DNA of 64,000 nt from Bigelowiella natans CCMP2755 (lineage: Eukaryota > Protista > Cercozoa): contig ADNK01002368.1 of NCBI GenBank assembly GCA_000320545.1, positions 13,464 through 77,463 of the forward strand, read 5' to 3'. Under the pieces are notes generated by a model, which saw only the letters and a list, made by a program, of their open reading frames with translations, did not search any database and was not told the origin of the DNA. Shown in pieces: positions 14,701-25,949 of this stretch. Every line of letters starts with the position of its first letter. Positions within the stretch are counted from its first letter, which is position 1. A program made the position numbers and the translations under genes.

Positions 14701-17175
14701 CACACATCCTTCTTCTACATAAAATACTTTCATCATCGTGATTATCAGTATGTTATTATTCTCCTTTCGAACATTTTTTAGAGAACAGGTACCATTTATT
14801 GTCTTTGAAAGACTTTATGTAGGAGTAATAGTGACCACCACGAGCTGTGCCACTGTGTTTTATTGTAGTAAACAAAGTAGATTTGAGTCAATTCCCATTA
14901 AATATGAATCCTCCTGATTTGTCATCGGTTGTGTTTTTGTGAATGTAACAGTACCTGTGCATCATAATCGCAAAGAGATCGTACGGCAGGCCACCCTACG
15001 AGAAGATGACGAGAAGAACCAGAACATGAGGGGGGGGGGGGGGGGGAGAGGAAATGATTAATTCGACCACAAGCCGGTATAACAAAATGATTGGAGTAAT
15101 CTCATCAGTAAAGGACGGGTATGGCTAAATAAGTGGATATATCGTACTACCGTACTACCATTACTACCTCTTTGGTCTCTTCCACATACTTATTCATATC
15201 GATGGTTTCTGCCACAGTAACCTTTTGATTGACCTTGACTCGCTGCATCAACTGCCAATTCATCTTAAATCGACTGAGAGCGATAGTCAATACAGTTGGT
15301 AGTTTTGCCTGTAGTAATGAGTAGAAACCGGTGTTAATGAATGGGAAGGGTGGATTGCTATTGTTATATTAAAAGCCAGCATTTAATAATGTGAAACGAC
15401 CAGGATAATTCTCTTTTCAGCATCGACTTTCTCCTTGGTCTTAGGATGCCTCCATCTGTGACAAGTATAATCATGATGTAAGTATGTATCAACAACTAGA
15501 ATGTGCCAATAAGGGGGGGAGGTTAGTCGTAACTAGTACATAATCGCAATCGATCTATGTACGCTAGAACAGACCTGTTTCCTTCAATGAGCTTTTCAGG
15601 CGCTAGAAACTTCTCAATGCCTTTTTCCACACTGAAATAAAGAACATCTTCTATGTGAATGATAACCATGGTGATTTCAACGTGAGCATATTCGTCTTGC
15701 ATACCAAGATTTTTTCTAAATTAGAATGAAGGGTAATTTAATTGAAGAGAACAGGCGTATTCGGAGGTAAAGGGGTATAAATAGAGAGAAAAAGAGAGAG
15801 TGGGTGAGTGAGAGAGAGGGAGGTAGAAAGAGGGGGAGTGTATGCATCTGTGCAACTGATGGATAATATAATGGCAGTGTAGGGCTGATAGAATTACGAG
15901 TCGACATCCTCTGAGAGAGCCAGCTGCAGTTGGTCAAATTTGCTGTCGATTCTCCTCTCATATCCGTCTAGAAAGTAGAGAAGATTTGCAGTAAGAACCC
16001 TCGGCCACAGAGGAATTGTTGATTGATGCTGTTCAACTCTTTATTTATTTGAGACGACAAATACGTACTAATACCTGTCAGTGCTTTGAGGGAATCGATA
16101 GAAGTGCCCATGTAAAGGGTGTTCGTAAATGAGTTGTTTGGATCAACATGTAGCGTTTTCTCCAGTGCATCAAACAGGACTTTCATGAGTTCCTAACGAT
16201 TTCGAAGATTCATGCACATGAGTCAATTTAGTATCAAGGTGCTGCATTTTGCTGATGTCCTTTACCTGGACGTCGTTCTGCTGAAAAGACTGTGCACGAT
16301 CCCAGTGGAATGAAATGGTAAGGCCCTGGTATGCAAAAGTAGGTAGGTAACCATGATGATGAATGACACATGAGCAAACACAAAACAAGGATAGTTTGGT
16401 GAAATAGAATAATCTGAGTGAAGATTGGAAGGGCACGCGATACAGTCGTTGTTGCGTCTACTTTCATGGAAAAACTTATTTTTTTTAATTTATTTATTTT
16501 TAAGTACTTAATATAATTGTGGCTGTAGTTATATCTTCATTACTATCGTGTAATGGAGACATATTGCCACCGTGCATCATCTTCTCTCTATACCTTGGTA
16601 TTTACAGCTGGTTGTTTGGACTTTGCGAGGCGTGCAAACTGTTGAAATATCATTTAAAATAGTAATAAGATACTAAAAAGAAAAATAAGTAGGTGAAACG
16701 CTCGTTTTCAGAATAACTGTTTGACCAGAAGTTGGAGCTGGTAAGGAATGCAAAACTTTGGGTCGCCATCCCTCTCCTTATCGTATCTTGGTTGTCATAA
16801 TGAATGAAAGTGATGATTGGAAGAATGAGAATAAACATATTGAATAGGACAACCGAAACTCAAAGATCGAAGCTCTGAACTGAGGCGTCATATACAAGGC
16901 CTGAAGCATGCTGTTAAGGTAGCATGTTGCTCCCTGTTTTAAATTAGATATATCAATCGCGATGCATCTTAATGCTTCAATATTTAAATACGTCATAAAA
17001 ACCTGGTTGAACAGCCCCACGAAGCCTGTGTGGCTTTTCCCACAAAATATGAACTGGAAATAGAGTATTAATAACTTTTAACATTCTGACAATGAAAACT
17101 GAGTGCATGGGGTACCTTCCCCCCGCCCCCAATTGGACGTTCCTGTGGTTTTTTCGTTTCTTTCGCTTCACTCAT
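7354..17175 (-). CDS. USP47: Ubiquitin carboxyl-terminal hydrolase, USP47-like, multi-exon
   Basis: Cys box GFVGLFNQ|GATCYLNSMLQALYMTPQFR. His box YDLFAIMMH|SGTARGGHYYSYIKSFKDNK|WYRFND. C-terminal EKALKIW resembles the USP47 tail. Stop after GIKLEF at 7354. Confidence 0.85.
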
Positions 17176-18189
17176 AGCGCTTGAAGTTTATTTGTCTGAA
17201 TTTTATTTGAAGAGTGGACCGACAATAGTTGAGGGCCATGAAATCCTTGAATTCGCTAGCTTGCAAATGCATATTTGTTGAAGCATCAGAGGAAAACATG
17301 TGGGGAGCATGAGGGAGATGCATGAGGAAACATATATTATAGTAATTCAATATACAAAGTAATTGGCTATGTAAGAAATTATTCTTCTCAATTGGTTTCG
17401 CTGAGGTGTGAAGGGGGGGGGGGGCGGGGGATCTAGAGTCTACGTGTAAAAGATTCCACCTTTCTGAGAATCTTCGCCCACCCGCGAAGCTATTCGGTGC
17501 AAGTGTTGTTCAGCAACTCACAATACAATTCCAGGTACTTATTTAGCTACGACATCCACATGAGATAGACGTACAACAAAATAGAACTTTTGTGAGATTT
17601 TTTCTTCGTTTATGTCTGTACAATCCCGAATTCGGAAGTCGCATGGTTTCAAATGATGCCTCTTGCAATCTGATTTGCTGTTGTAACGATCGATCCTCAA
17701 AAATGATCATTGAGTGCTATTATTTAGCGAATTCGAACTTGCGACAAGCTAATGTGCGCTCTCAAAATTGCAAAATGCACATTTCACAGCTGCATCACTA
17801 GAGAAATGCAGGGAACTTTTGTGATTGTAGAGGAATACGGGAGCGACGCGGTCCACGAGCAACTCGTAGTGAAAGTTTGATTAAAATAACATGAATATGA
17901 AGCTAGAGACATCCAATTATATATGTCGCTGCTACAATACAAATCCACGGATTTCTTCTCGGAAATCAGTGTCAAATTCTCGATATGGATTTCCAGTAAT
18001 CACGGGACTTTCCAAAAGAAAATTGATAAAGTATATCATACTTTAGAAGAGACATAGAGATAAAGAACAAATGACTGAATATTAGAGCCTATGATCAGCG
18101 TGGCCCGAAGAATTTGAATCTGCATTTCCAGAGAGATCCTAATCGACGTCGCCCCCCCCTCAGTCCGTGCCTTATTTTCTGATTAAGGC

Positions 18190-20832
18190 ATGATTGTCTA
18201 TTTCGCATATGCTACCGCCGCCCTTGTGCTGGCTTTTGCGGCATACATTATCTTGGTAAGAACACACAAAGTTTCCATTTGTTTCTACCCCATTAAGTGA
18301 CCATGGCCTGAGAGCAAAATAGTTTCTCGATGATCCGTAATTTGAGTGAAAGCTGCGTTTATTTCGTCCGGAAAGTGGTTAGAAGGATTCCGTAGTAAGA
18401 TATATGCAGACACATAACTATTGCAGATAAATCCAAAGTCATCAAATTATTATTCCATTGAGAAGTCCTTTGTGGTCGCCTCCCTTAGAGCGCCTCCAGT
18501 CCGGTGAGGACGAAGGAAGGGAAGTCTCTTGCTCTTCCACCGGTGCGAAAAAATGCATTTACACATAGTTCTATCATTTATTATGAAAATCCAAGATATT
18601 GCGCGATAACTGATATTCTACCTACGAGATATCATGGTGAGAAATGCTTACAATATCAGGTTTTTTCTCCTAGCATTCCACTAATTGGAGGCCTTGTTGA
18701 GTTCATGAAGCACCCGCTTGAGGCTGTACGCAAGGGCTACAAAAAGCATGGAGACATCTTCACTATTTCAATGTTAGGGAAACGCCTAACCTTTCTCGTT
18801 GGGCCGAAAGGTGGAAAATTAACTCTTACAGATATTTGTACATACACACATATGCGCACATGTATGTAGAAAAATAAATATTTGTATACATCGTGTTGAT
18901 TCATCTGAATCACTGTGTATTTTCGCTGTTGCATATACCTGCTTACGTGTCTTGCAGCTGGGGAGGTGTTTTTCTCCGCAACAGATGCCGAGCTGGGTCA
19001 AGAGGAAGTCTACAAATTTATGACAGCGGTCGGTTGCTGTCCTGGGCAGAATTTGTTATATTTTATGTGCGATGCTCTTTATGGTTAATAATTAGTCACA
19101 TATGTGGATCCCTTGCTATCACTGCTTTTGCCTGATAAAGATATATCGTAATAATGTGAGCAGGTTTTTGGAAAAGGCGTTGTCTATGACTGCCCAGCTA
19201 ACATAAGGTGATCATTTCGTTGTAGTATACACCACAACCTTCTATATAATGAACACGAATCTAATAATACAGTCTTTATGGCTCGTTTCTTGCCCTCTTT
19301 GTCATTCCCGTCTTATTAATCTCCTTTTTACGACATGCATCTTCGATTTCGTGTTCTTGATTGTCGCAACTTCAGATCTCAACAATTCAAGTTTCTTGGC
19401 AAGGGCCTCAAAACTGAGCGGTAGGGGGGGAGACTGAAAGAGAGTGGACAACACGAACCTGCATTCAAAGACACACGCATTAACATGTTTATATGCCGAG
19501 GTTGAAGGATGGATTTGTAGTTCATTTGCATTGTAAATTCTGACAAAAGATCATATAGTCGATTCTTGTTTTTGGCCCCCGTCCTTGCTTAGTCTAAAGT
19601 CATACGTGCCATTGATCATGGAGGAATGCAAGAAGTATTTAGATGAAAAGCTAACCGGGGAGGTAATACTAGTATTAGCACCACCTATATTAGCACCACC
19701 TATATATATCATTTCTCGTCGTTAAGGGCAAATGTTTGGCTGCATATATCAGTTCTCTCTTCATTATGACCAAAGTCTTATGCTGTTTGATTCTCATTCT
19801 CCCTTCTCCTCACAATCCCCCCTCTTTCCAGAGCGGAGAGATCGACATTTTGGACACAATGAGCGAGATGCTAATTCTGACGTAATTGAATTGATTGTTG
19901 CCAGCATCCATTCATTGATTTACAATGTTTCGGAGCATTTTACTTACCTACCCGCGGTAGCTACTTTCCCATCTCCTCCTCTCCTCCACCCCATATTTCT
20001 GATGCCTTCTCTCCCTTTCTACGTTCCTTGTTGTAGCTCATCCCGTTGCTTGATGGGAGAAGAAGTGCGGAAAAACCTATTTGGCCAGGTGCTACACCAC
20101 ATGAATCAATTCCCTTCTTATTAAGATCATTGAGACAGCAGCTGTGACCAATCACGCTGATGTGATGATGAAGATGATGACGATGATGATGATGACGATG
20201 ATGCTGGTCCTGATATACTCGCGTCTTTTTGTTGATCTTTAAAAGGTTGCAGCACTGTACCACGACCTCGATCAAGGTAGTCGAAAAGTAGTAACAGTAG
20301 TGAAGAGATTCACCGCCGAGTGTCAAGAAGGAAGAGGAGGAAGAGGATAGCTACTTTCGGGGATGATGGAAGAGAAACGATGTATATATGAGGGCGGGGA
20401 GGAAGGAAAGAGAGCGATAGAGAGAGAGAGAAGGAACAGAAGGACAAAGATGAAGAAAAGGACTAGCACTCGGATCAAACAGCAATCCCTCCTAACGAAT
20501 ATCATGATGCTATGTTGTAAGGCATCACCCCATTGTCTGTCTTCTTCCCAAATCTTCCTACACCTGCACACCGACGACGTGATATTGCTCGAGCCGAGAT
20601 GGTCAAGCTCTTTGGCAAGGTCATAAGTCTACAATCTCGATTATCTTTGCTGCTTTTGACAACCAAACGCATGAAAGAGAGCAAAGAAGAATATTATGAC
20701 TAACACAAACTGCTTTTGTTGTGTAATAAATTCAATCTTAGGTTATTCGTGAAAGACGCAGTAGGAAGGATATCGATACTTCAGATATGCTTGGGTGCTG
20801 TTAAGATAAACACTCCCGTTTGACTCCCTCTT

Positions 20833-20874
<42 letters not shown>

Positions 20875-21083
20875 AATGGCCATGGAAGCACATAAGTACT
20901 TTCTCGAGGGAGATTGGATGATTGGGTAGAGGTGGGAGGAAATGGGAAATATGTTCTCTGTTCAGTATTGATGATAATAAATTCGTCGTCTTTGTTGAAG
21001 GTATCTTTGCACTGTGCGCTACAAGCCAGCTAAGGGTAATAATCATATTGCAAAATAGATTTGAGAACATAGTGTTAATGAGT

Positions 21084-21120
<37 letters not shown>

Positions 21121-21835
21121 ATGTAGAGCAAGTATGAACCACTTATTAAGTTATAAATCGTCGTTATTCAGGCGAGAAGGAGGGCCGTCTCCTCACTGTT
21201 GATGAGATCACGGGGTGAGTAGTAAGTGGTAATGATGGTGGTGGTGATGGTGGTGCGGTATCTAACGATGAATGGAGAAGAATAATGATGATATGTAAAT
21301 CTAATAACGTTTTATGTCACCACATTGGTCGCAATCATCATCATCATCATCATCATCATCAGATTTCTCATCGGCCTGCTTTCGCTGGGCAACACACCTC
21401 TTCAGTAACCTCCACGTGGTCGGTGTTGTAATAACCCAGATAAAGGGTGGGGGGGGGGGGGGTAGTGTACTAATGGGAAGACACGAAAATTGTTAAGACG
21501 ACAACAACGTATGAAACATCGCCAAGCTCCTCACTGTCCATGCTAAAATACTAGCTGTTGTTGCTTCTCCTGTTGGTGCTGTCACTGCTAAAGCATCATC
21601 ATCATCATCATCATCATCATCGTCATCACCACCACCACCATCCTATCCTATCTACCTTCTTATCATACCCTCGACCGACAATCCCCTACCCTCCAGGTCG
21701 ATCTTGTACATGATGCATACCAAATCTAGAGGCTATTATGACAGAATGTGCAAAGAGCTGGCGGATTTCGGCGACAAGAAGAAGGTGAGATTTTTTTTCA
21801 GATATAATATAAATATATATATATATATATATATA

Positions 21836-21875
<40 letters not shown>

Positions 21876-22756
21876 ATGTTAATGTAATAGATATTATGGT
21901 CATCATATTATAAAACGATCGAGTACAAGGACTTTCTTCTTCCCCCGTCCCCCCATTGTTTCTATTGCAGTCTTTCCTCCTCCTCCTCCCCCGCCTCATC
22001 ATCATCCTCCTCTTCCTTGTCCCAATAATCCGTCCTTTATTCGTCGGTCTCTCTGTGGTTCCTCTTTTCTTCTCCTTCTTCTTCTTTACAGGGGGGTACT
22101 GTGGAGGTTGATTACGAGGATACAACGAAGATGAAGTATTCACATTCAAATAGAAATAGTGTGTGTGTGTGTGTGTGGGAGAGAGAGAGAGAGAATGAAG
22201 AGTAAAAAGTAGGGCGGGTTTGGGTCGTCGTTTTACAATCGCCAACAGTAATAACAACAATCATCATCATCATCATGATCATCTCTCTCTACTACCAATC
22301 CAGATTCACAGAAGCTTGCATCCAAGAGGGCCTACGCATGTACCCCCCCCTTATTCTACTTATGCGCATGGCACGGAAGGTAGCAAAGCTGGTATGGTAG
22401 AGGGGGTGTTGATTCAAGAAGGGATTGGAGTTTAGCTTATCGATTTCTTCGAGCTTCTTTTCATATCTCACTACAGCAGTGAACTTAGATAGATTGTAGG
22501 CGACTATTGTCTATCATCATCATTATCATTTTAGAATTATTGGAAGAACGAATTACACACGCACACACACACACACACACATACAGGGGCGTGAATACGG
22601 CAAATACGGGATACCGAAGGGAGACATCGTTGTTACGTCCCCCGCAGCATCTATGCGCCTTAACAACATCTTCAAGGTTCTACTCACCACAAGGGCGGGG
22701 GGCTGATGCAAGAATGATCTACTTGAGGCAGAAAAAACAAATATTATTTCAGGGAG

Positions 22757-22808
<52 letters not shown>

Positions 22809-23265
22809 GGAGATGAATGTTATCTATGTCGAGCCACCAGATCACCATCATCGTCAGTTTTTTAGATCTAATTTTTGCAATGATTTTGTCCTTCCCGCGC
22901 TGTTTGTTTCTGTTCTTTTTCCTCCCCCTCCTCATCTTGCTTCTTCGTTGCATCGTCGTCTTACTACCCAGGGCGCTGATTCTTACAACCCTGAGCGATG
23001 GTTCGCTGCTAAGGTAACAATCAAGTAGAAACGTACGATTCATATTGAGGGGGGGGGGGATTAAGGGAGGATCGAGCACATGCAAAATGATTCATCTCAC
23101 CGCCACTAACATTGAATAATATACTACTACAGGACCTTCCTAGATACTCTTTCATTGGATTTGGTGGTGGTCGCCACGCATGTTTGGGCGGAGCTTTCGC
23201 GTAATCACACACACACACACAATATATAGATATTAAAAAATCTATATTTATCAATTCATTCATTC

Positions 23266-23311
<46 letters not shown>

Positions 23312-23924
23312 TACAAAAGCTGCATGATATGATAGATAAGTAGTGTTTGATTCCTTGAATGTAATGAAATGAAAAGTAAGAGCAGTTATCATCTCGCTCC
23401 ACACACACAGTTGATTCATGCTCTCATCCCCATTCTTGCCCCCTTCCTCAATGCGGCTAATCAGATACCTGCAAATGAAATGCATTTTCACTGTACTCTT
23501 CAACACCTATGACCTCGAAGCTGTTTCCGACAAAATGCCACTGCCCAACTACGCAGCGATGGTAGCAAAATAAGAGAGAGGAGTATGTAGTAGCCTGATC
23601 TTGCAAATACAAGCACGCACGCACTCATGTATTCAGACCGCTATCTATCACGACGACTTCGGGATCATCTTGTGCATCTTTATCATGTTTATTATGCAGT
23701 AGGAAGCAGGAATAATTCGTATCGTATGCTGTACGACTACTACTACTACTACTTTACTACGCATCATCATCAGCATCATCATCATCATGATCATCATCAT
23801 CATCAGGTGGTGGGACCTCACCATGGAAAAGAAACACGTGTGCGCTACCGTCGAAAGAGCCCTCAAGACATCCAAAAGTCTCTTGACCTCAAAATACCCG
23901 AGATCCGGACGGAGAGGTGAAGAC

Positions 23925-23962
<38 letters not shown>

Positions 23963-24312
23963 GACAATGAATGATAGCGAGGAGGGACGTGGGAGGGGGG
24001 GGAGGATAGAAAAACTGGCCACAAGCACTTGGCAGGATAACCACATGTGAAAGAAGACCAAAACAACTCCATCTGACCCACTCTGTTCCCATTGGAATAT
24101 TACCAGCAAAATAAGCAATGATTGTAGTTGTGTTTATCAATATGTTAATACATGTACCGAGCAGCTCAAAACTGCTGCCCCCCGATGACAAGAAGGCAGA
24201 GGAATTCACGTTAGAAGAGGTGGTGTCGACTATATGGACCCTGCCCCGCCCTCATGTCCCTTCTCTTCCTTTCTATCAAGAACGTGGTTCCACCTCCTAC
24301 AGATATGATATA

Positions 24313-24354
<42 letters not shown>

Positions 24355-24463
24355 TTCAGGTGAAAAAGCACAACACGGAGAAGGATCTTTGGGTTGTGGT
24401 AGATGACCTTGTCTTCGATATCAGCGAATATGTTCCGCAGCACCCTGGGTACTTCTTCTTCTT

Positions 24464-24494
<31 letters not shown>

Positions 24495-24498
24495 CCGT

Positions 24499-24568
<70 letters not shown>

Positions 24569-25054
24569 GTAGAAGTGCCACTACCTAGAAAGTAACAATT
24601 AACTTAGTAAGAGAACAATGATGCGTTATATATAAGCTGCTGTGTTCTCGTCCCGTATCTTTCCTTCATTGCGAACTATGGCTACCTGTGTTTGCTGCTT
24701 GTGTACCACTTGGCTTATTATTCATACACACACTCTACCCCTACCCCTCCCCCTCCCCCTCCTACAGAGGACTCAAGATCCTCAACAACGCTGGTGGAGA
24801 CTCAACAAAAGGCTTCAAAGGTGATGATAACGGTGGTAGTGTGGGTAGCGTGTGCGCGCGTGCGTGTGTGCGTGCGTGCGCGCGCGTGTGTGTGTGTGTG
24901 TGTGTCGCGACGATCGTGTGAACAGAATTACTCGCTATTCTTGTTGCTAATGATTTCTTTTGAATCCTTGCCACTCCCAACAGGCCCTCAGCACCCGGCA
25001 CATGTGATGAACACTATTATGGAATTTTACAAGGGAAAACTCAAGAAAGAATAA
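18190..25054 (+). CDS. CYP51: Sterol 14-alpha-demethylase CYP51 fused to a C-terminal cytochrome b5 domain, multi-exon; apparent 1-nt deletion at about 21381
   Basis: N-terminal TM (MIVYFAYATAALVLAFAAYIIL). YKFMTAVFGKGVVYDC, I-helix (F)AGQHTSSVTSTW, EGLRMYPP, NPERW, heme motif FGGGRHACLG. RVRYRRK continues through a phase-compatible intron (23917-24164) into the b5 domain, which ends at TAA 25054. Confidence 0.9.
24165..25054 (+). CDS. Cytochrome b5 heme-binding domain (CB5LP-type), last four exons of the CYP51 fusion
   Basis: Exons 24165-24219, 24360-24448, 24768-24820 and 24984-25054 give FTLEEVKKHNTEKDLWVVVDDLVFDISEYVPQHPGGLKILNNAGGDSTKGFKGPQHPAHVMNTIMEFYKGKLKKE*. Both axial His present (HPGG, GPQH). 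No C-terminal TM. Confidence 0.9.
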
Positions 25055-25949
25055 GCGTATCATCATCATCCAAGAAAAATCTTGGTCGAGATTGCAACCG
25101 TTTGTGGCGCGAGTGCCTAATCATCAGTTGAATCTTGTCATGTGCTGCTTACGGGTCCTATGATATGTCCTCGATCACTGTGCAATGCATGCGCACAATG
25201 TCTACGTCATAAACCTCACGTAGTAGTTCCTGCAAAATATGTGCATATCTTCTGTGGCGCTAATTGTTCGCGATCGAATGACTCTAGGACTAGCAGACGG
25301 CTCGCAATGCATGTGCGGCTAATACGAGCTTGTCGGGCTAAAAAATTAAGGCTTAAATGTATAGCGCCGACCTGCTGAAAATGCATCAGCTTTTTAATTC
25401 TGGCTGCTTGAGCGGTGCGATGCTTAATTTTCATAGTTGTTTAATTGCTGCCTTGCTAGCTTGTGCGCGCTGTAGACGTATACACCGCAAAATTCGAAGT
25501 TAGACACGCCTTGTTAGGACATGTATGTCATCACATACACGCCTTTGCTGGTATAAACCATGATATGTATTTTGAAAAAAATTAAAATTATAAAACCAGT
25601 CTCACATATTTGTTATGCGGCAATTATCGAGACATATGTGTGGCGATAGGGAAAATGCGCCTATTCGATCAGAATGCCGGCAAAATAAATAGCGGATACT
25701 GATTGTGTTTCTCATCGTGTTTCTCTTATGTTCGTGCATATCACATGTAAACATACAGCAAGCCATGGGATAGCATGCTGCAACGTGCACATTGTTGTTT
25801 ATATGCAGCACTTTTTGAATGAGTAACATGGTATCGTATGGCACATCTCAGTCCGTTGTCGCTCATTATACAAATTTTGGTATTGGCAATTTCATCATAT
25901 AATTAATTTTGTGTGTCATTAATCATTATTATCAGGCTACACATCATTC

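What the first reader, a model, noticed from the sequence alone, without database searches (positions are those of the whole stretch)
23807..25054. Natural CYP51-cytochrome b5 fusion (CB5LP-type redox partner tethered to sterol 14-demethylase)
Seen: CYP51 does not stop after the usual VRYRRK end. It runs through a linker (SPQDIQKSLDLKIPEIRTE), a donor AG|GTGAAG at 23917 and an acceptor CAG|C at 24164 that match in phase 2, then SSKLLPPDDKKAEEFTLEE and a complete b5 domain. There is no room for a separate promoter. Known: eukaryotic CYP51 is normally stand-alone, and the classic fusion is the Methylococcus CYP51-ferredoxin. The HPGG...AGxDSTxGFxGPQH signature matches the plant cytochrome b5-like protein (CB5LP) subfamily. 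I recall that subfamily being reported as the CYP51 electron carrier in Arabidopsis; this needs verifying. Inference: a Rosetta-stone fusion showing this partnership exists outside plants.
Basis: partly seen in the sequence, partly recalled or inferred. Interest (0 to 1): 0.85.

Follow-up and report, generated by a model that had tools for sequence, protein, structure and literature searches.

The report
Natural CYP51–cytochrome b5 fusion enzyme
In the alga Bigelowiella natans and its relatives, the sterol-making enzyme CYP51 is made as one protein with a small haem protein (cytochrome b5 of the plant CB5LP type) attached to its tail, which independently supports a CYP51–CB5LP electron-transfer partnership reported for plants in 2025.

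Summary
Confirmed. The window is Bigelowiella natans, a chlorarachniophyte alga. The gene at 18142-25237 (+) has 27 exons. Four further exons encode a complete cytochrome b5 domain.

An intron-less 2,037-nt transcript contig matches all 27 exons and carries one 600-aa ORF (P450 at 43-474, b5 at 527-597). Fused transcripts of 595-602 aa also exist in four more protein clusters. Two are named (Norrisiella sphaerica, Lotharella globosa).

The b5 domain is CB5LP-type. It is 57-58% identical to rice and maize CB5LP, has the GPQH motif, and has no C-terminal anchor. CB5LP was shown in 2025 to be the electron carrier of Arabidopsis CYP51 and was called plant-specific. I found no second CYP51 and no free CB5LP in this genome.

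The most likely reading is a sterol 14-demethylase with its redox partner tethered, still dependent on a separate flavin reductase. The electron-transfer role is inferred, not shown.

I found no paper describing this fusion, although the sequences sit in public databases with automatic names only.

The parts
18142..25237 (+). Whole transcribed gene: 27 exons, 26 GT-AG introns of 117-319 nt; CDS 18190-25054
   Evidence: Transcript contig L002 aligned to the window
18142..18255 (+). Exon 1: 5' UTR (48 nt), ATG at 18190, N-terminal membrane anchor MIVYFAYATAALVLAFAAYIIL
   Evidence: helix 2-22 in the model
18489..18542 (+). Exon 2 (SASSPVRTKEGKSLALPP), missed in my first hand-built model
18660..18810 (+). 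Exon 3, CYP51 N-terminal region (the query)
18958..19028 (+). Exon 4 (CYP51)
19164..19207 (+). Exon 5 (CYP51)
19376..19420 (+). Exon 6 (CYP51)
19593..19662 (+). Exon 7 (CYP51)
19832..19881 (+). Exon 8 (CYP51)
20037..20088 (+). Exon 9 (CYP51)
20246..20276 (+). Exon 10 (CYP51)
20522..20619 (+). Exon 11 (CYP51)
20742..20794 (+). Exon 12 (CYP51)
21001..21035 (+). Exon 13 (YLCTVRYKPAK)
21172..21214 (+). Exon 14 (CYP51)
21363..21418 (+). Exon 15: helix I with the AGQHTSS motif. The window differs from the transcript here: G instead of C at 21374, and three T instead of four at 21380-21382, which breaks the frame in the assembly
21697..21784 (+). Exon 16 (CYP51)
22092..22135 (+). Exon 17 (CYP51)
22304..22379 (+). 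Exon 18 (CYP51)
22587..22676 (+). Exon 19 (CYP51)
22972..23013 (+). Exon 20 (CYP51)
23133..23200 (+). Exon 21: haem-thiolate loop FGGGRHACLG (Cys437 of the 600-aa protein)
23465..23561 (+). Exon 22 (CYP51)
23807..23916 (+). Exon 23: end of the CYP51 fold (…VRYRRK, residue 492) and first half of the linker (SPQDIQKSLDLKIPEIRTE)
23917..24164 (+). Junction intron, 248 nt, GTGAAG…GAGCAG, phase 2, holds a (CTG)n run. If retained it contains in-frame TGA 23918-20 and ATG 24118
   Evidence: removed in L002
24165..24219 (+). Exon 24: second half of the linker (SSKLLPPDDKKAEEFTLEE)
24360..24448 (+). Exon 25: b5 core with first haem ligand (QHPGG, His558)
   Evidence: PF00173 at 35 bits for this exon alone
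24768..24820 (+). Exon 26: b5 (GLKILNNAGGDSTKGFK)
24984..25237 (+). Exon 27: GPQH with second haem ligand (His581), C-terminus …GKLKKE, TAA at 25052-25054, 3' UTR of about 183 nt; the transcript contig ends in a run of A at 25237

Best explanation
This is the only CYP51 (sterol 14-alpha-demethylase) gene detected in Bigelowiella natans. It encodes one 600-aa (67.5 kDa) protein with four parts: an N-terminal ER membrane anchor, the CYP51 P450 domain, a poorly conserved linker of about 34 residues, and a C-terminal cytochrome b5 domain of the CB5LP type. Shown: the gene structure, the spliced single-ORF mRNA, conservation of the architecture in five protein clusters (three named as chlorarachniophyte species), intact haem ligands in both domains (Cys437; His558 and His581), and CB5LP-type sequence. 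Inferred: the tethered b5 domain is reduced by a separate flavoprotein (NADPH-P450 reductase and/or NADH-b5 reductase). It then docks on the P450 domain of the same or a neighbouring molecule and delivers electrons for the three oxidation steps that remove the 14-alpha-methyl group. In plants the free, N-anchored CB5LP does this job. The fusion most likely arose when a CB5LP gene lost its own N-terminal anchor and was joined by splicing to the last CYP51 exon, so that CYP51's anchor now holds both domains.
For: Transcript evidence:
- Contig L002 (2,037 nt, ORF 49-1851 = P0001, PF00067 + PF00173) matches 27 window exons at 100%, apart from two positions in exon 15, including the 23916|24165 joint.
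- Three further MMETSP transcripts of 600 aa, marked 'type:complete', fall in the same cluster. The JGI model Bigna1/79359 identifies the organism.

Conservation:
- Fused ORFs of 595-602 aa occur in four more clusters, including Norrisiella sphaerica and Lotharella globosa.
- Identity to B. natans is 78-82% in the P450 domain, 71-82% in b5, and only 21-54% in the linker. That is the pattern of two folded domains joined by a flexible tether.

Domain identity:
- The CYP51 domain scores 430 bits against PDB 6q2c, and all top PDB hits are CYP51.
- For the b5 domain, a profile search returns N-anchored proteins of about 120 aa named 'cytochrome B5-like protein' (rice, maize, Selaginella, green and red algae). 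88 of 120 have an N-terminal TM, none a C-terminal one, and 121 of 125 carry GPQH.
- An HMM built only from Archaeplastida CB5LPs scores the fused domains at 105-114 bits, against 32-75 bits for other B. natans b5 domains.

Genome context:
- I detected no second CYP51 and no free CB5LP.
- Candidate reductases are present.

Functional precedent:
- CB5LP is required for Arabidopsis CYP51A2 activity and is reduced by CBR1, ATR1 and ATR2 (PMC13155568).
- Bacterial CYP51-ferredoxin fusions have the same N-to-C order and a 20-30-residue linker (PMC7947880).
Against: There are no protein-level or enzymatic data. The complex prediction gave no verdict. I could not get read-level RNA data, so minor isoforms are not excluded, such as intron retention giving CYP51 alone or an internal start giving b5 alone. 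The window's assembly carries a frame-breaking 1-nt deletion in exon 15. If that were real in this strain, this copy would be non-functional. The transcript from apparently the same strain is intact, so a sequencing or assembly error is more likely. The search for a free CB5LP works exon by exon and could miss a gene split into short exons.
Confidence: 0.8

Rival explanations
1. The fused mRNA exists, but the working proteins are separate. CYP51 alone could come from retention of intron 23917-24164 (stop at TGA 23918-20) or from cleavage in the linker. A free b5 could start at ATG 24118, whose short hydrophobic N-terminus (MIVVVFINMLIHV) would stand in for the CB5LP anchor.
For: The in-frame TGA and the in-frame ATG 24118 ORF that runs into exon 24 are both real. 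The linker is poorly conserved. No read-level data were available to count isoforms.
Against: Every transcript-derived ORF on record is fused and complete: four for B. natans and four further clusters. A search restricted to short proteins found no near-identical free b5 from B. natans. The frame and linker length are kept across genera. The 13-residue hydrophobic stretch is too short for a membrane helix.
Confidence: 0.07
2. The fusion protein is real, but the b5 domain does not carry electrons to the P450. It could act as an allosteric or structural effector, or serve another acceptor such as a sterol C4-methyl oxidase or a desaturase.
For: From my own background knowledge, not checked here: some b5 effects on mammalian P450s do not need electron transfer. 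From the paper: bacterial CB5LP-like proteins are redox-active yet do not stimulate Arabidopsis CYP51 (PMC13155568). So membership of the family does not by itself prove a CYP51 partnership.
Against: Both axial histidines are invariant in all five fusions. In Arabidopsis, a haem-less CB5LP mutant fails to support CYP51A2 or rescue the mutant plant. A covalent tether to CYP51 is the simplest sign that CYP51 is the client.
Confidence: 0.12
3. The fusion is an artefact: a chimeric transcript assembly or a gene-model read-through joining two neighbouring genes.
For: Neighbouring genes are sometimes merged by assemblers, and the JGI genome model is itself imperfect.
Against: Independent assemblies from several B. 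natans transcriptomes and four further clusters give the same architecture. The joint uses a canonical GT-AG intron of typical length. The ORF is continuous, and there is no stop between the domains in any species.
Confidence: 0.01

Closest known systems
Arabidopsis CB5LP (At1g60660) with CYP51A2 (Zhao et al., Sci Adv 2025, PMC13155568)
   Same: The same two components are present: an obtusifoliol-type CYP51 and a CB5LP-type b5 (GPQH motif, b5 domain at the C-terminal end of the polypeptide, no tail anchor). The b5 domain is 57-58% identical to rice and maize CB5LP.
   Different: In plants they are two separate ER proteins, and CB5LP has its own N-terminal anchor. Here they form one chain and the b5 has no anchor of its own. 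The organism is a rhizarian alga, whereas the paper calls CB5LP plant-exclusive.
Methylococcus capsulatus CYP51-ferredoxin fusion (CYP51fx; PDB 6mcw; PMC7947880)
   Same: CYP51 lies at the N-terminus, a small one-electron carrier at the C-terminus, and a linker of a few tens of residues joins them. A separate reductase is still needed.
   Different: The carrier there is a bacterial iron-sulfur ferredoxin and the protein is soluble. Here the carrier is a haem b5 domain and the protein is an ER-anchored eukaryotic enzyme.
Self-sufficient P450s such as P450 BM3 (CYP102A1)
   Same: The redox partner is fused to the C-terminus of the P450.
   Different: BM3 carries a complete FMN/FAD reductase and needs no other protein. 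This fusion has no flavin domain.
b5-fused oxidoreductases (front-end desaturases, nitrate reductase, sulfite oxidase, flavocytochrome b2)
   Same: A b5 domain is built into its client enzyme. B. natans itself has b5-desaturase and b5-sulfite-oxidase-type genes.
   Different: Those b5 domains are not CB5LP-type (no GPQH, 32-75 bits against the CB5LP HMM), and the client is not a P450.

Membership tests
CYP51 (sterol 14-alpha-demethylase) | P450 fold with the haem-thiolate loop FxxGxxxCxG | tested here: met
   PF00067 at 204.5 bits over residues 43-474. FGGGRHACLG at 430-439, invariant in the alignment.
CYP51 (sterol 14-alpha-demethylase) | Closest relatives are CYP51s; helix I motif AGQHTS | tested here: met
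   All top PDB hits are CYP51, the best being 6q2c at 430 bits. AGQHTSS lies at 296-302 of the transcript product. In the window's assembly this exon is frame-shifted.
CYP51 (sterol 14-alpha-demethylase) | Catalyses 14-alpha-demethylation of a sterol substrate | not testable with these tools
   This needs an enzyme assay.
CB5LP (cytochrome b5-like protein, reversed topology) | Cytochrome b5 fold with two axial histidines | tested here: met
   PF00173 at 66.5 bits over residues 527-597. His558 (QHPGG) and His581 (GPQH) are invariant in the fusions.
CB5LP (cytochrome b5-like protein, reversed topology) | Sequence belongs with CB5LP rather than tail-anchored or other b5 domains | tested here: met
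   Profile hits are plant 'cytochrome B5-like protein' entries. An HMM from Archaeplastida CB5LPs scores the fusions at 105-114 bits against 32-75 bits for other B. natans b5 domains. Identity to rice CB5LP is 57%, against 39% to those other domains. GPQH replaces the GHS of canonical b5. No tail-anchored plant CB5 sequences were available for the tree, and the exact branch position is unresolved.
CB5LP (cytochrome b5-like protein, reversed topology) | b5 domain lies C-terminal to the anchor; no C-terminal tail anchor | tested here: met
   The protein ends 19 residues after His581 with the charged tail …GKLKKE. The only hydrophobic anchor is at residues 2-22.
CB5LP (cytochrome b5-like protein, reversed topology) | Free-standing protein of about 120 aa with its own N-terminal TM helix | tested here: not met
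   The domain is part of a 600-aa chain, and CYP51 takes the place of the TM segment. It is therefore a CB5LP-type domain, not a CB5LP protein in the strict sense.
CB5LP (cytochrome b5-like protein, reversed topology) | Transfers electrons from CBR or CPR to CYP51 | not testable with these tools
   The complex prediction gave no verdict. Biochemistry is needed.
Redox-partner-fused P450s (CYP51fx type) | P450 at the N-terminus, one-electron carrier at the C-terminus, flexible linker | tested here: met
   Domain limits are 43-474 and 527-597. The linker is 21-54% conserved while the domains are 71-82% conserved. CYP51fx has a 20-30-residue linker.
Self-sufficient P450s (BM3 type) | Flavin reductase domain in the same chain | tested here: not met
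   Only PF00067 and PF00173 are found. A diflavin reductase candidate lies elsewhere in the genome, on contig C1596.

The most novel reading that the evidence does not exclude
CB5LP-type b5 may not be a plant invention. It could be an old, widespread eukaryotic partner of CYP51 that opisthokonts lost. N-anchored CB5LP-like proteins turn up in the oomycete Aphanomyces, in the apusomonad Thecamonas and in many unnamed marine eukaryote transcripts, and in chlorarachniophytes the partnership became a single gene. On this reading the fused enzyme could run largely or wholly through b5, for example on NADH via b5 reductase, which would be a second general route of electron supply to an ER P450.
Probability: 0.3. 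Interest if true: 0.8.

Novelty: new variant of a known kind. Interest (0 to 1): 0.7.

Why it matters
Gene fusions are among the strongest sequence-only signs that two proteins work together.

- **Independent support.** This fusion supports, from an unrelated lineage, the 2025 claim that CB5LP is the dedicated electron carrier of CYP51.
- **Wider family range.** It shows that the CB5LP family reaches beyond the 'plant-specific' range stated in that paper.
- **A new kind of fusion.** As far as I could find in the paper library, it is the first natural P450 fused to a cytochrome b5.
- **A ready experimental system.** It offers a 1:1 tethered system for studying how b5 feeds a P450, by structure, kinetics, and comparison of NADH and NADPH routes.
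- **An annotation fix.** The public genome-derived model for this gene lacks 19 residues of the catalytic helix I because of an assembly indel. The transcript-derived protein should be used instead.

Tried and rejected
- **Complex prediction.** Complex prediction with the CYP51 domain, two haems and the b5 domain gave no verdict (score 0.00). It counts neither for nor against binding.
- **Single-piece b5 search.** Searching with the cut-out b5 piece returned one hit only. The alignment-based search was needed.
- **First exon model.** My hand-built model was wrong in three places: exon 2 was missed, exon 13 misplaced, and exon 15 ended at the wrong donor. The transcript corrected all three.
- **b5 tree.** The tree (74 columns, 131 rows) shows the five fused domains as one clade (SH-aLRT 96). 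It does not resolve their sister group, and the outgroups did not stay together. I therefore make no claim about a green-algal or host origin.
- **Naming CYP51 relatives.** The cluster look-up of the nearest free CYP51s gave mostly unnamed Logan proteins, so I built no CYP51 tree. The Atlas look-alikes are plant obtusifoliol demethylases, which is a lead only.
- **AlphaFold model.** Mean pLDDT is 80.5 and pTM 0.77. It confirms the two folds and a short helix at 494-501 followed by coil, but the tool returns no inter-domain contacts, so I draw no docking conclusion.
- **Spliced model handling.** I sent no self-joined spliced model to any search tool. Full-length searches used the database protein P0001, and exons were sent by reference. 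Joining was done only inside local scripts to compare with L002.

Full report
**What is in the sequence**

The region 18142-25237 on the + strand is one multi-exon eukaryotic gene. Reading the DNA and translating candidate exons gave a CYP51 that begins with a membrane anchor at ATG 18190. Its last CYP51 exon (23807-23916) runs past the usual …VRYRRK end into SPQDIQKSLDLKIPEIRTE.

That exon ends in phase 2 at a GTGAAG donor (23917). An acceptor at 24164 restores the frame into SSKLLPPDDKKAEEFTLEE. Three more exons (24360-24448, 24768-24820, 24984-25054) encode a b5 domain with QHPGG and GPQH, and the CDS ends at TAA 25052-54.

**Transcript evidence**

- I searched with the longest exon, by reference, against 1.8 billion representative proteins. 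This returned a 100%-identical 600-aa protein, P0001.
- Its cluster holds three more 600-aa MMETSP transcripts marked 'type:complete' and the JGI model Bigna1/79359 (EukProt: Bigelowiella natans), which names the organism.
- P0001 is encoded on a 2,037-nt contig, L002 (JGI/IMG sample 3300017184), as a single uninterrupted ORF at 49-1851, with PF00067 and PF00173.
- L002 aligns to the window as 27 blocks from 18142 to 25237, at 100% identity apart from two positions in exon 15. One joint is 23916|24165, and the contig ends in a run of A.
- All 26 introns are GT-AG and 117-319 nt long (median 168.5). The junction intron of 248 nt is unremarkable.

The fused mRNA is therefore real.

**An assembly problem in exon 15**

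The spliced window sequence differs from L002 at only two places, both in exon 15. There is G for C at 21374, and one T fewer at 21380-82. This shifts the frame inside helix I: the window reads FLIGLLSLG…, while the transcript reads FLIALLFAGQHTSS.

The JGI model (P0115, 581 aa) skips exactly these 19 residues. The rest of the transcript is identical to the window. I therefore read this as an assembly or sequencing error rather than a broken gene, but genomic reads would be needed to prove it.

**Conservation of the fusion**

I searched with the C-terminal 105 residues of P0001, with candidate lengths taken from the whole protein. This found four further clusters of 595-602 aa, all PF00067 + PF00173 and all from MMETSP transcripts. 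Two are named: Norrisiella sphaerica and Lotharella globosa. [quoted passage not shown]

| Region | Identity to B. natans |
|---|---|
| P450 domain | 78-82% |
| b5 domain | 71-82% |
| Linker | 21-54% |

The frame is kept, and the haem ligands Cys437, His558 and His581 are conserved. This is the pattern of two folded, selected domains on a flexible tether.

**What kind of b5 domain it is**

- A profile of the fused domains plus one free homologue returned 466 short proteins. The best named ones are plant 'cytochrome B5-like protein' entries (rice, maize, Selaginella and others), green algae (Pyramimonas, Raphidocelis) and a red alga (Galdieria). Aphanomyces (oomycetes) and Thecamonas also appear.
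- Of 120 such proteins, 88 have an N-terminal hydrophobic helix and none has a C-terminal one. 121 of 125 carry GPQH.
- An HMM trained only on 20 Archaeplastida CB5LPs scores the fused domains at 105-114 bits. Other b5 domains of B. natans (desaturase, fumarate-reductase-like, sulfite-oxidase-like) score 32-75 bits. Identity is 57-58% to rice and maize CB5LP, against 39% to those other domains.
- Canonical b5 structures in the PDB align with GHS where this family has GPQH.
- In the tree, the five fused domains form one clade (SH-aLRT 96), but their position within the family is unresolved.

The domain is CB5LP-type. It is not a free CB5LP, because its own anchor is replaced by CYP51.

**Context in the genome**

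- The CYP51 domain finds only this locus at high identity. The other P450 hits are 23-38% identical.
- The CB5LP profile finds no second locus with the family's C-terminal exon.
- A diflavin-reductase candidate (contig C1596) and b5-reductase-type FAD domains (C610, C2461) exist.

The fused gene therefore appears to be the organism's only sterol 14-demethylase, and it still needs a separate reductase.

**What is known**

Zhao et al. (Sci Adv 2025, PMC13155568) showed the following for Arabidopsis CB5LP:

- It is an ER protein with an N-terminal anchor.
- It is essential for sterol 14-demethylation and lies close to CYP51A2.
- It is needed for CYP51A2 activity in yeast microsomes, and a haem-less mutant is inactive.
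- It is reduced by CBR1 (NADH) and by ATR1/ATR2 (NADPH).

They call it exclusive to plants, but they surveyed only plants, red algae, fungi, animals and bacteria.

Bacterial CYP51-ferredoxin fusions have the P450 first, a 20-30-residue linker, and the carrier last (PMC7947880).

Seven full-text searches on CYP51, P450, b5 fusions, Bigelowiella and chlorarachniophytes found no description of a natural CYP51-b5 or P450-b5 fusion. The library is incomplete, so this is absence of evidence only.

**Mechanism**

Shown: one mRNA, one ORF, both domains intact and conserved, and CB5LP-type sequence.

Inferred:
- The N-terminal helix anchors the protein in the ER with both domains in the cytosol.
- A flavoprotein reduces the b5 haem.
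- The linker of about 34 residues lets the b5 domain reach the P450 of the same or a neighbouring chain, where it delivers electrons for the three successive oxidations.

The AlphaFold model confirms the two folds, a short helix at 494-501, and coil up to the b5 domain (mean pLDDT 80.5, pTM 0.77). It gives no usable information on docking. The complex test gave no verdict.

**Origin**

Chlorarachniophytes are rhizarians with a green-algal plastid. The Atlas look-alikes of the whole protein are plant obtusifoliol demethylases, and the best solved relative is an entry titled obtusifoliol 14-alpha-demethylase (6q2c). Transfer of both genes from the green endosymbiont is plausible but untested here. 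CB5LP-like proteins in Aphanomyces and Thecamonas show that the family is wider than Archaeplastida in any case.

**Verdict**

This is a new variant of a known kind: a P450 fused to its redox partner, but with a partner (a CB5LP-type cytochrome b5) that I could not find described in fused form. The sequences are public but carry only automatic names.

**Limits**

- No read-level RNA data and no protein or enzyme data were available.
- The search for other lineages with this fusion was limited by the word-based index.
- I sent no self-joined spliced sequence to any search tool. The database protein P0001 and exon references were used instead.

Noticed in passing
window 21374 and 21380-21382: Compared with the transcript, the assembly has G for C and one T fewer inside exon 15, which breaks the frame in CYP51 helix I. 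The public JGI model (P0115, 581 aa) skips the 19 residues FLIALLFAGQHTSSVTSTW as a result.
   Followed up: partly
window 24118-24164 (inside the junction intron): An ATG opens a frame (MIVVVFINMLIHVPS…) that runs in phase straight into exon 24. The short hydrophobic start recalls the N-terminal anchor of free CB5LPs. It could be a decayed relic of the ancestral CB5LP first exon, an alternative start, or chance. No free b5 of this sequence is on record.
   Followed up: partly
proteins P0134, P0189, P0198, P0208 (Aphanomyces), P0124 (Thecamonas trahens), P0123: N-anchored CB5LP-like proteins occur outside Archaeplastida, contrary to the 'plant-specific' label. P0123 and P0124 carry two CB5LP-like domains in tandem behind one N-terminal helix.
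   Followed up: partly
own genome, e.g. G000:C1871:58895-60232, C1880:64875-66332, C2863:109548-109766, C3331:14270-14485: Several other P450 and b5-domain genes of this genome lie in long uninterrupted open frames (387-722 aa), whereas this CYP51-b5 gene is cut into 27 exons of 31-151 coding bases.
   Followed up: no
window 20150-24930 (introns of the 3' two-thirds of the gene): Introns here are packed with simple repeats: (CAT)n, (CA)n, (GA)n, (TA)n, (CTG)n and (TAC)n. Introns in the first 2 kb of the gene have almost none.
   Followed up: no
window 16778-17020 (-): This open frame has a ubiquitin-specific-protease-like motif (…GATCYLNSMLQALYMTPQFR…). A neighbouring gene on the opposite strand, upstream of the CYP51 start, is likely.
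   Followed up: no
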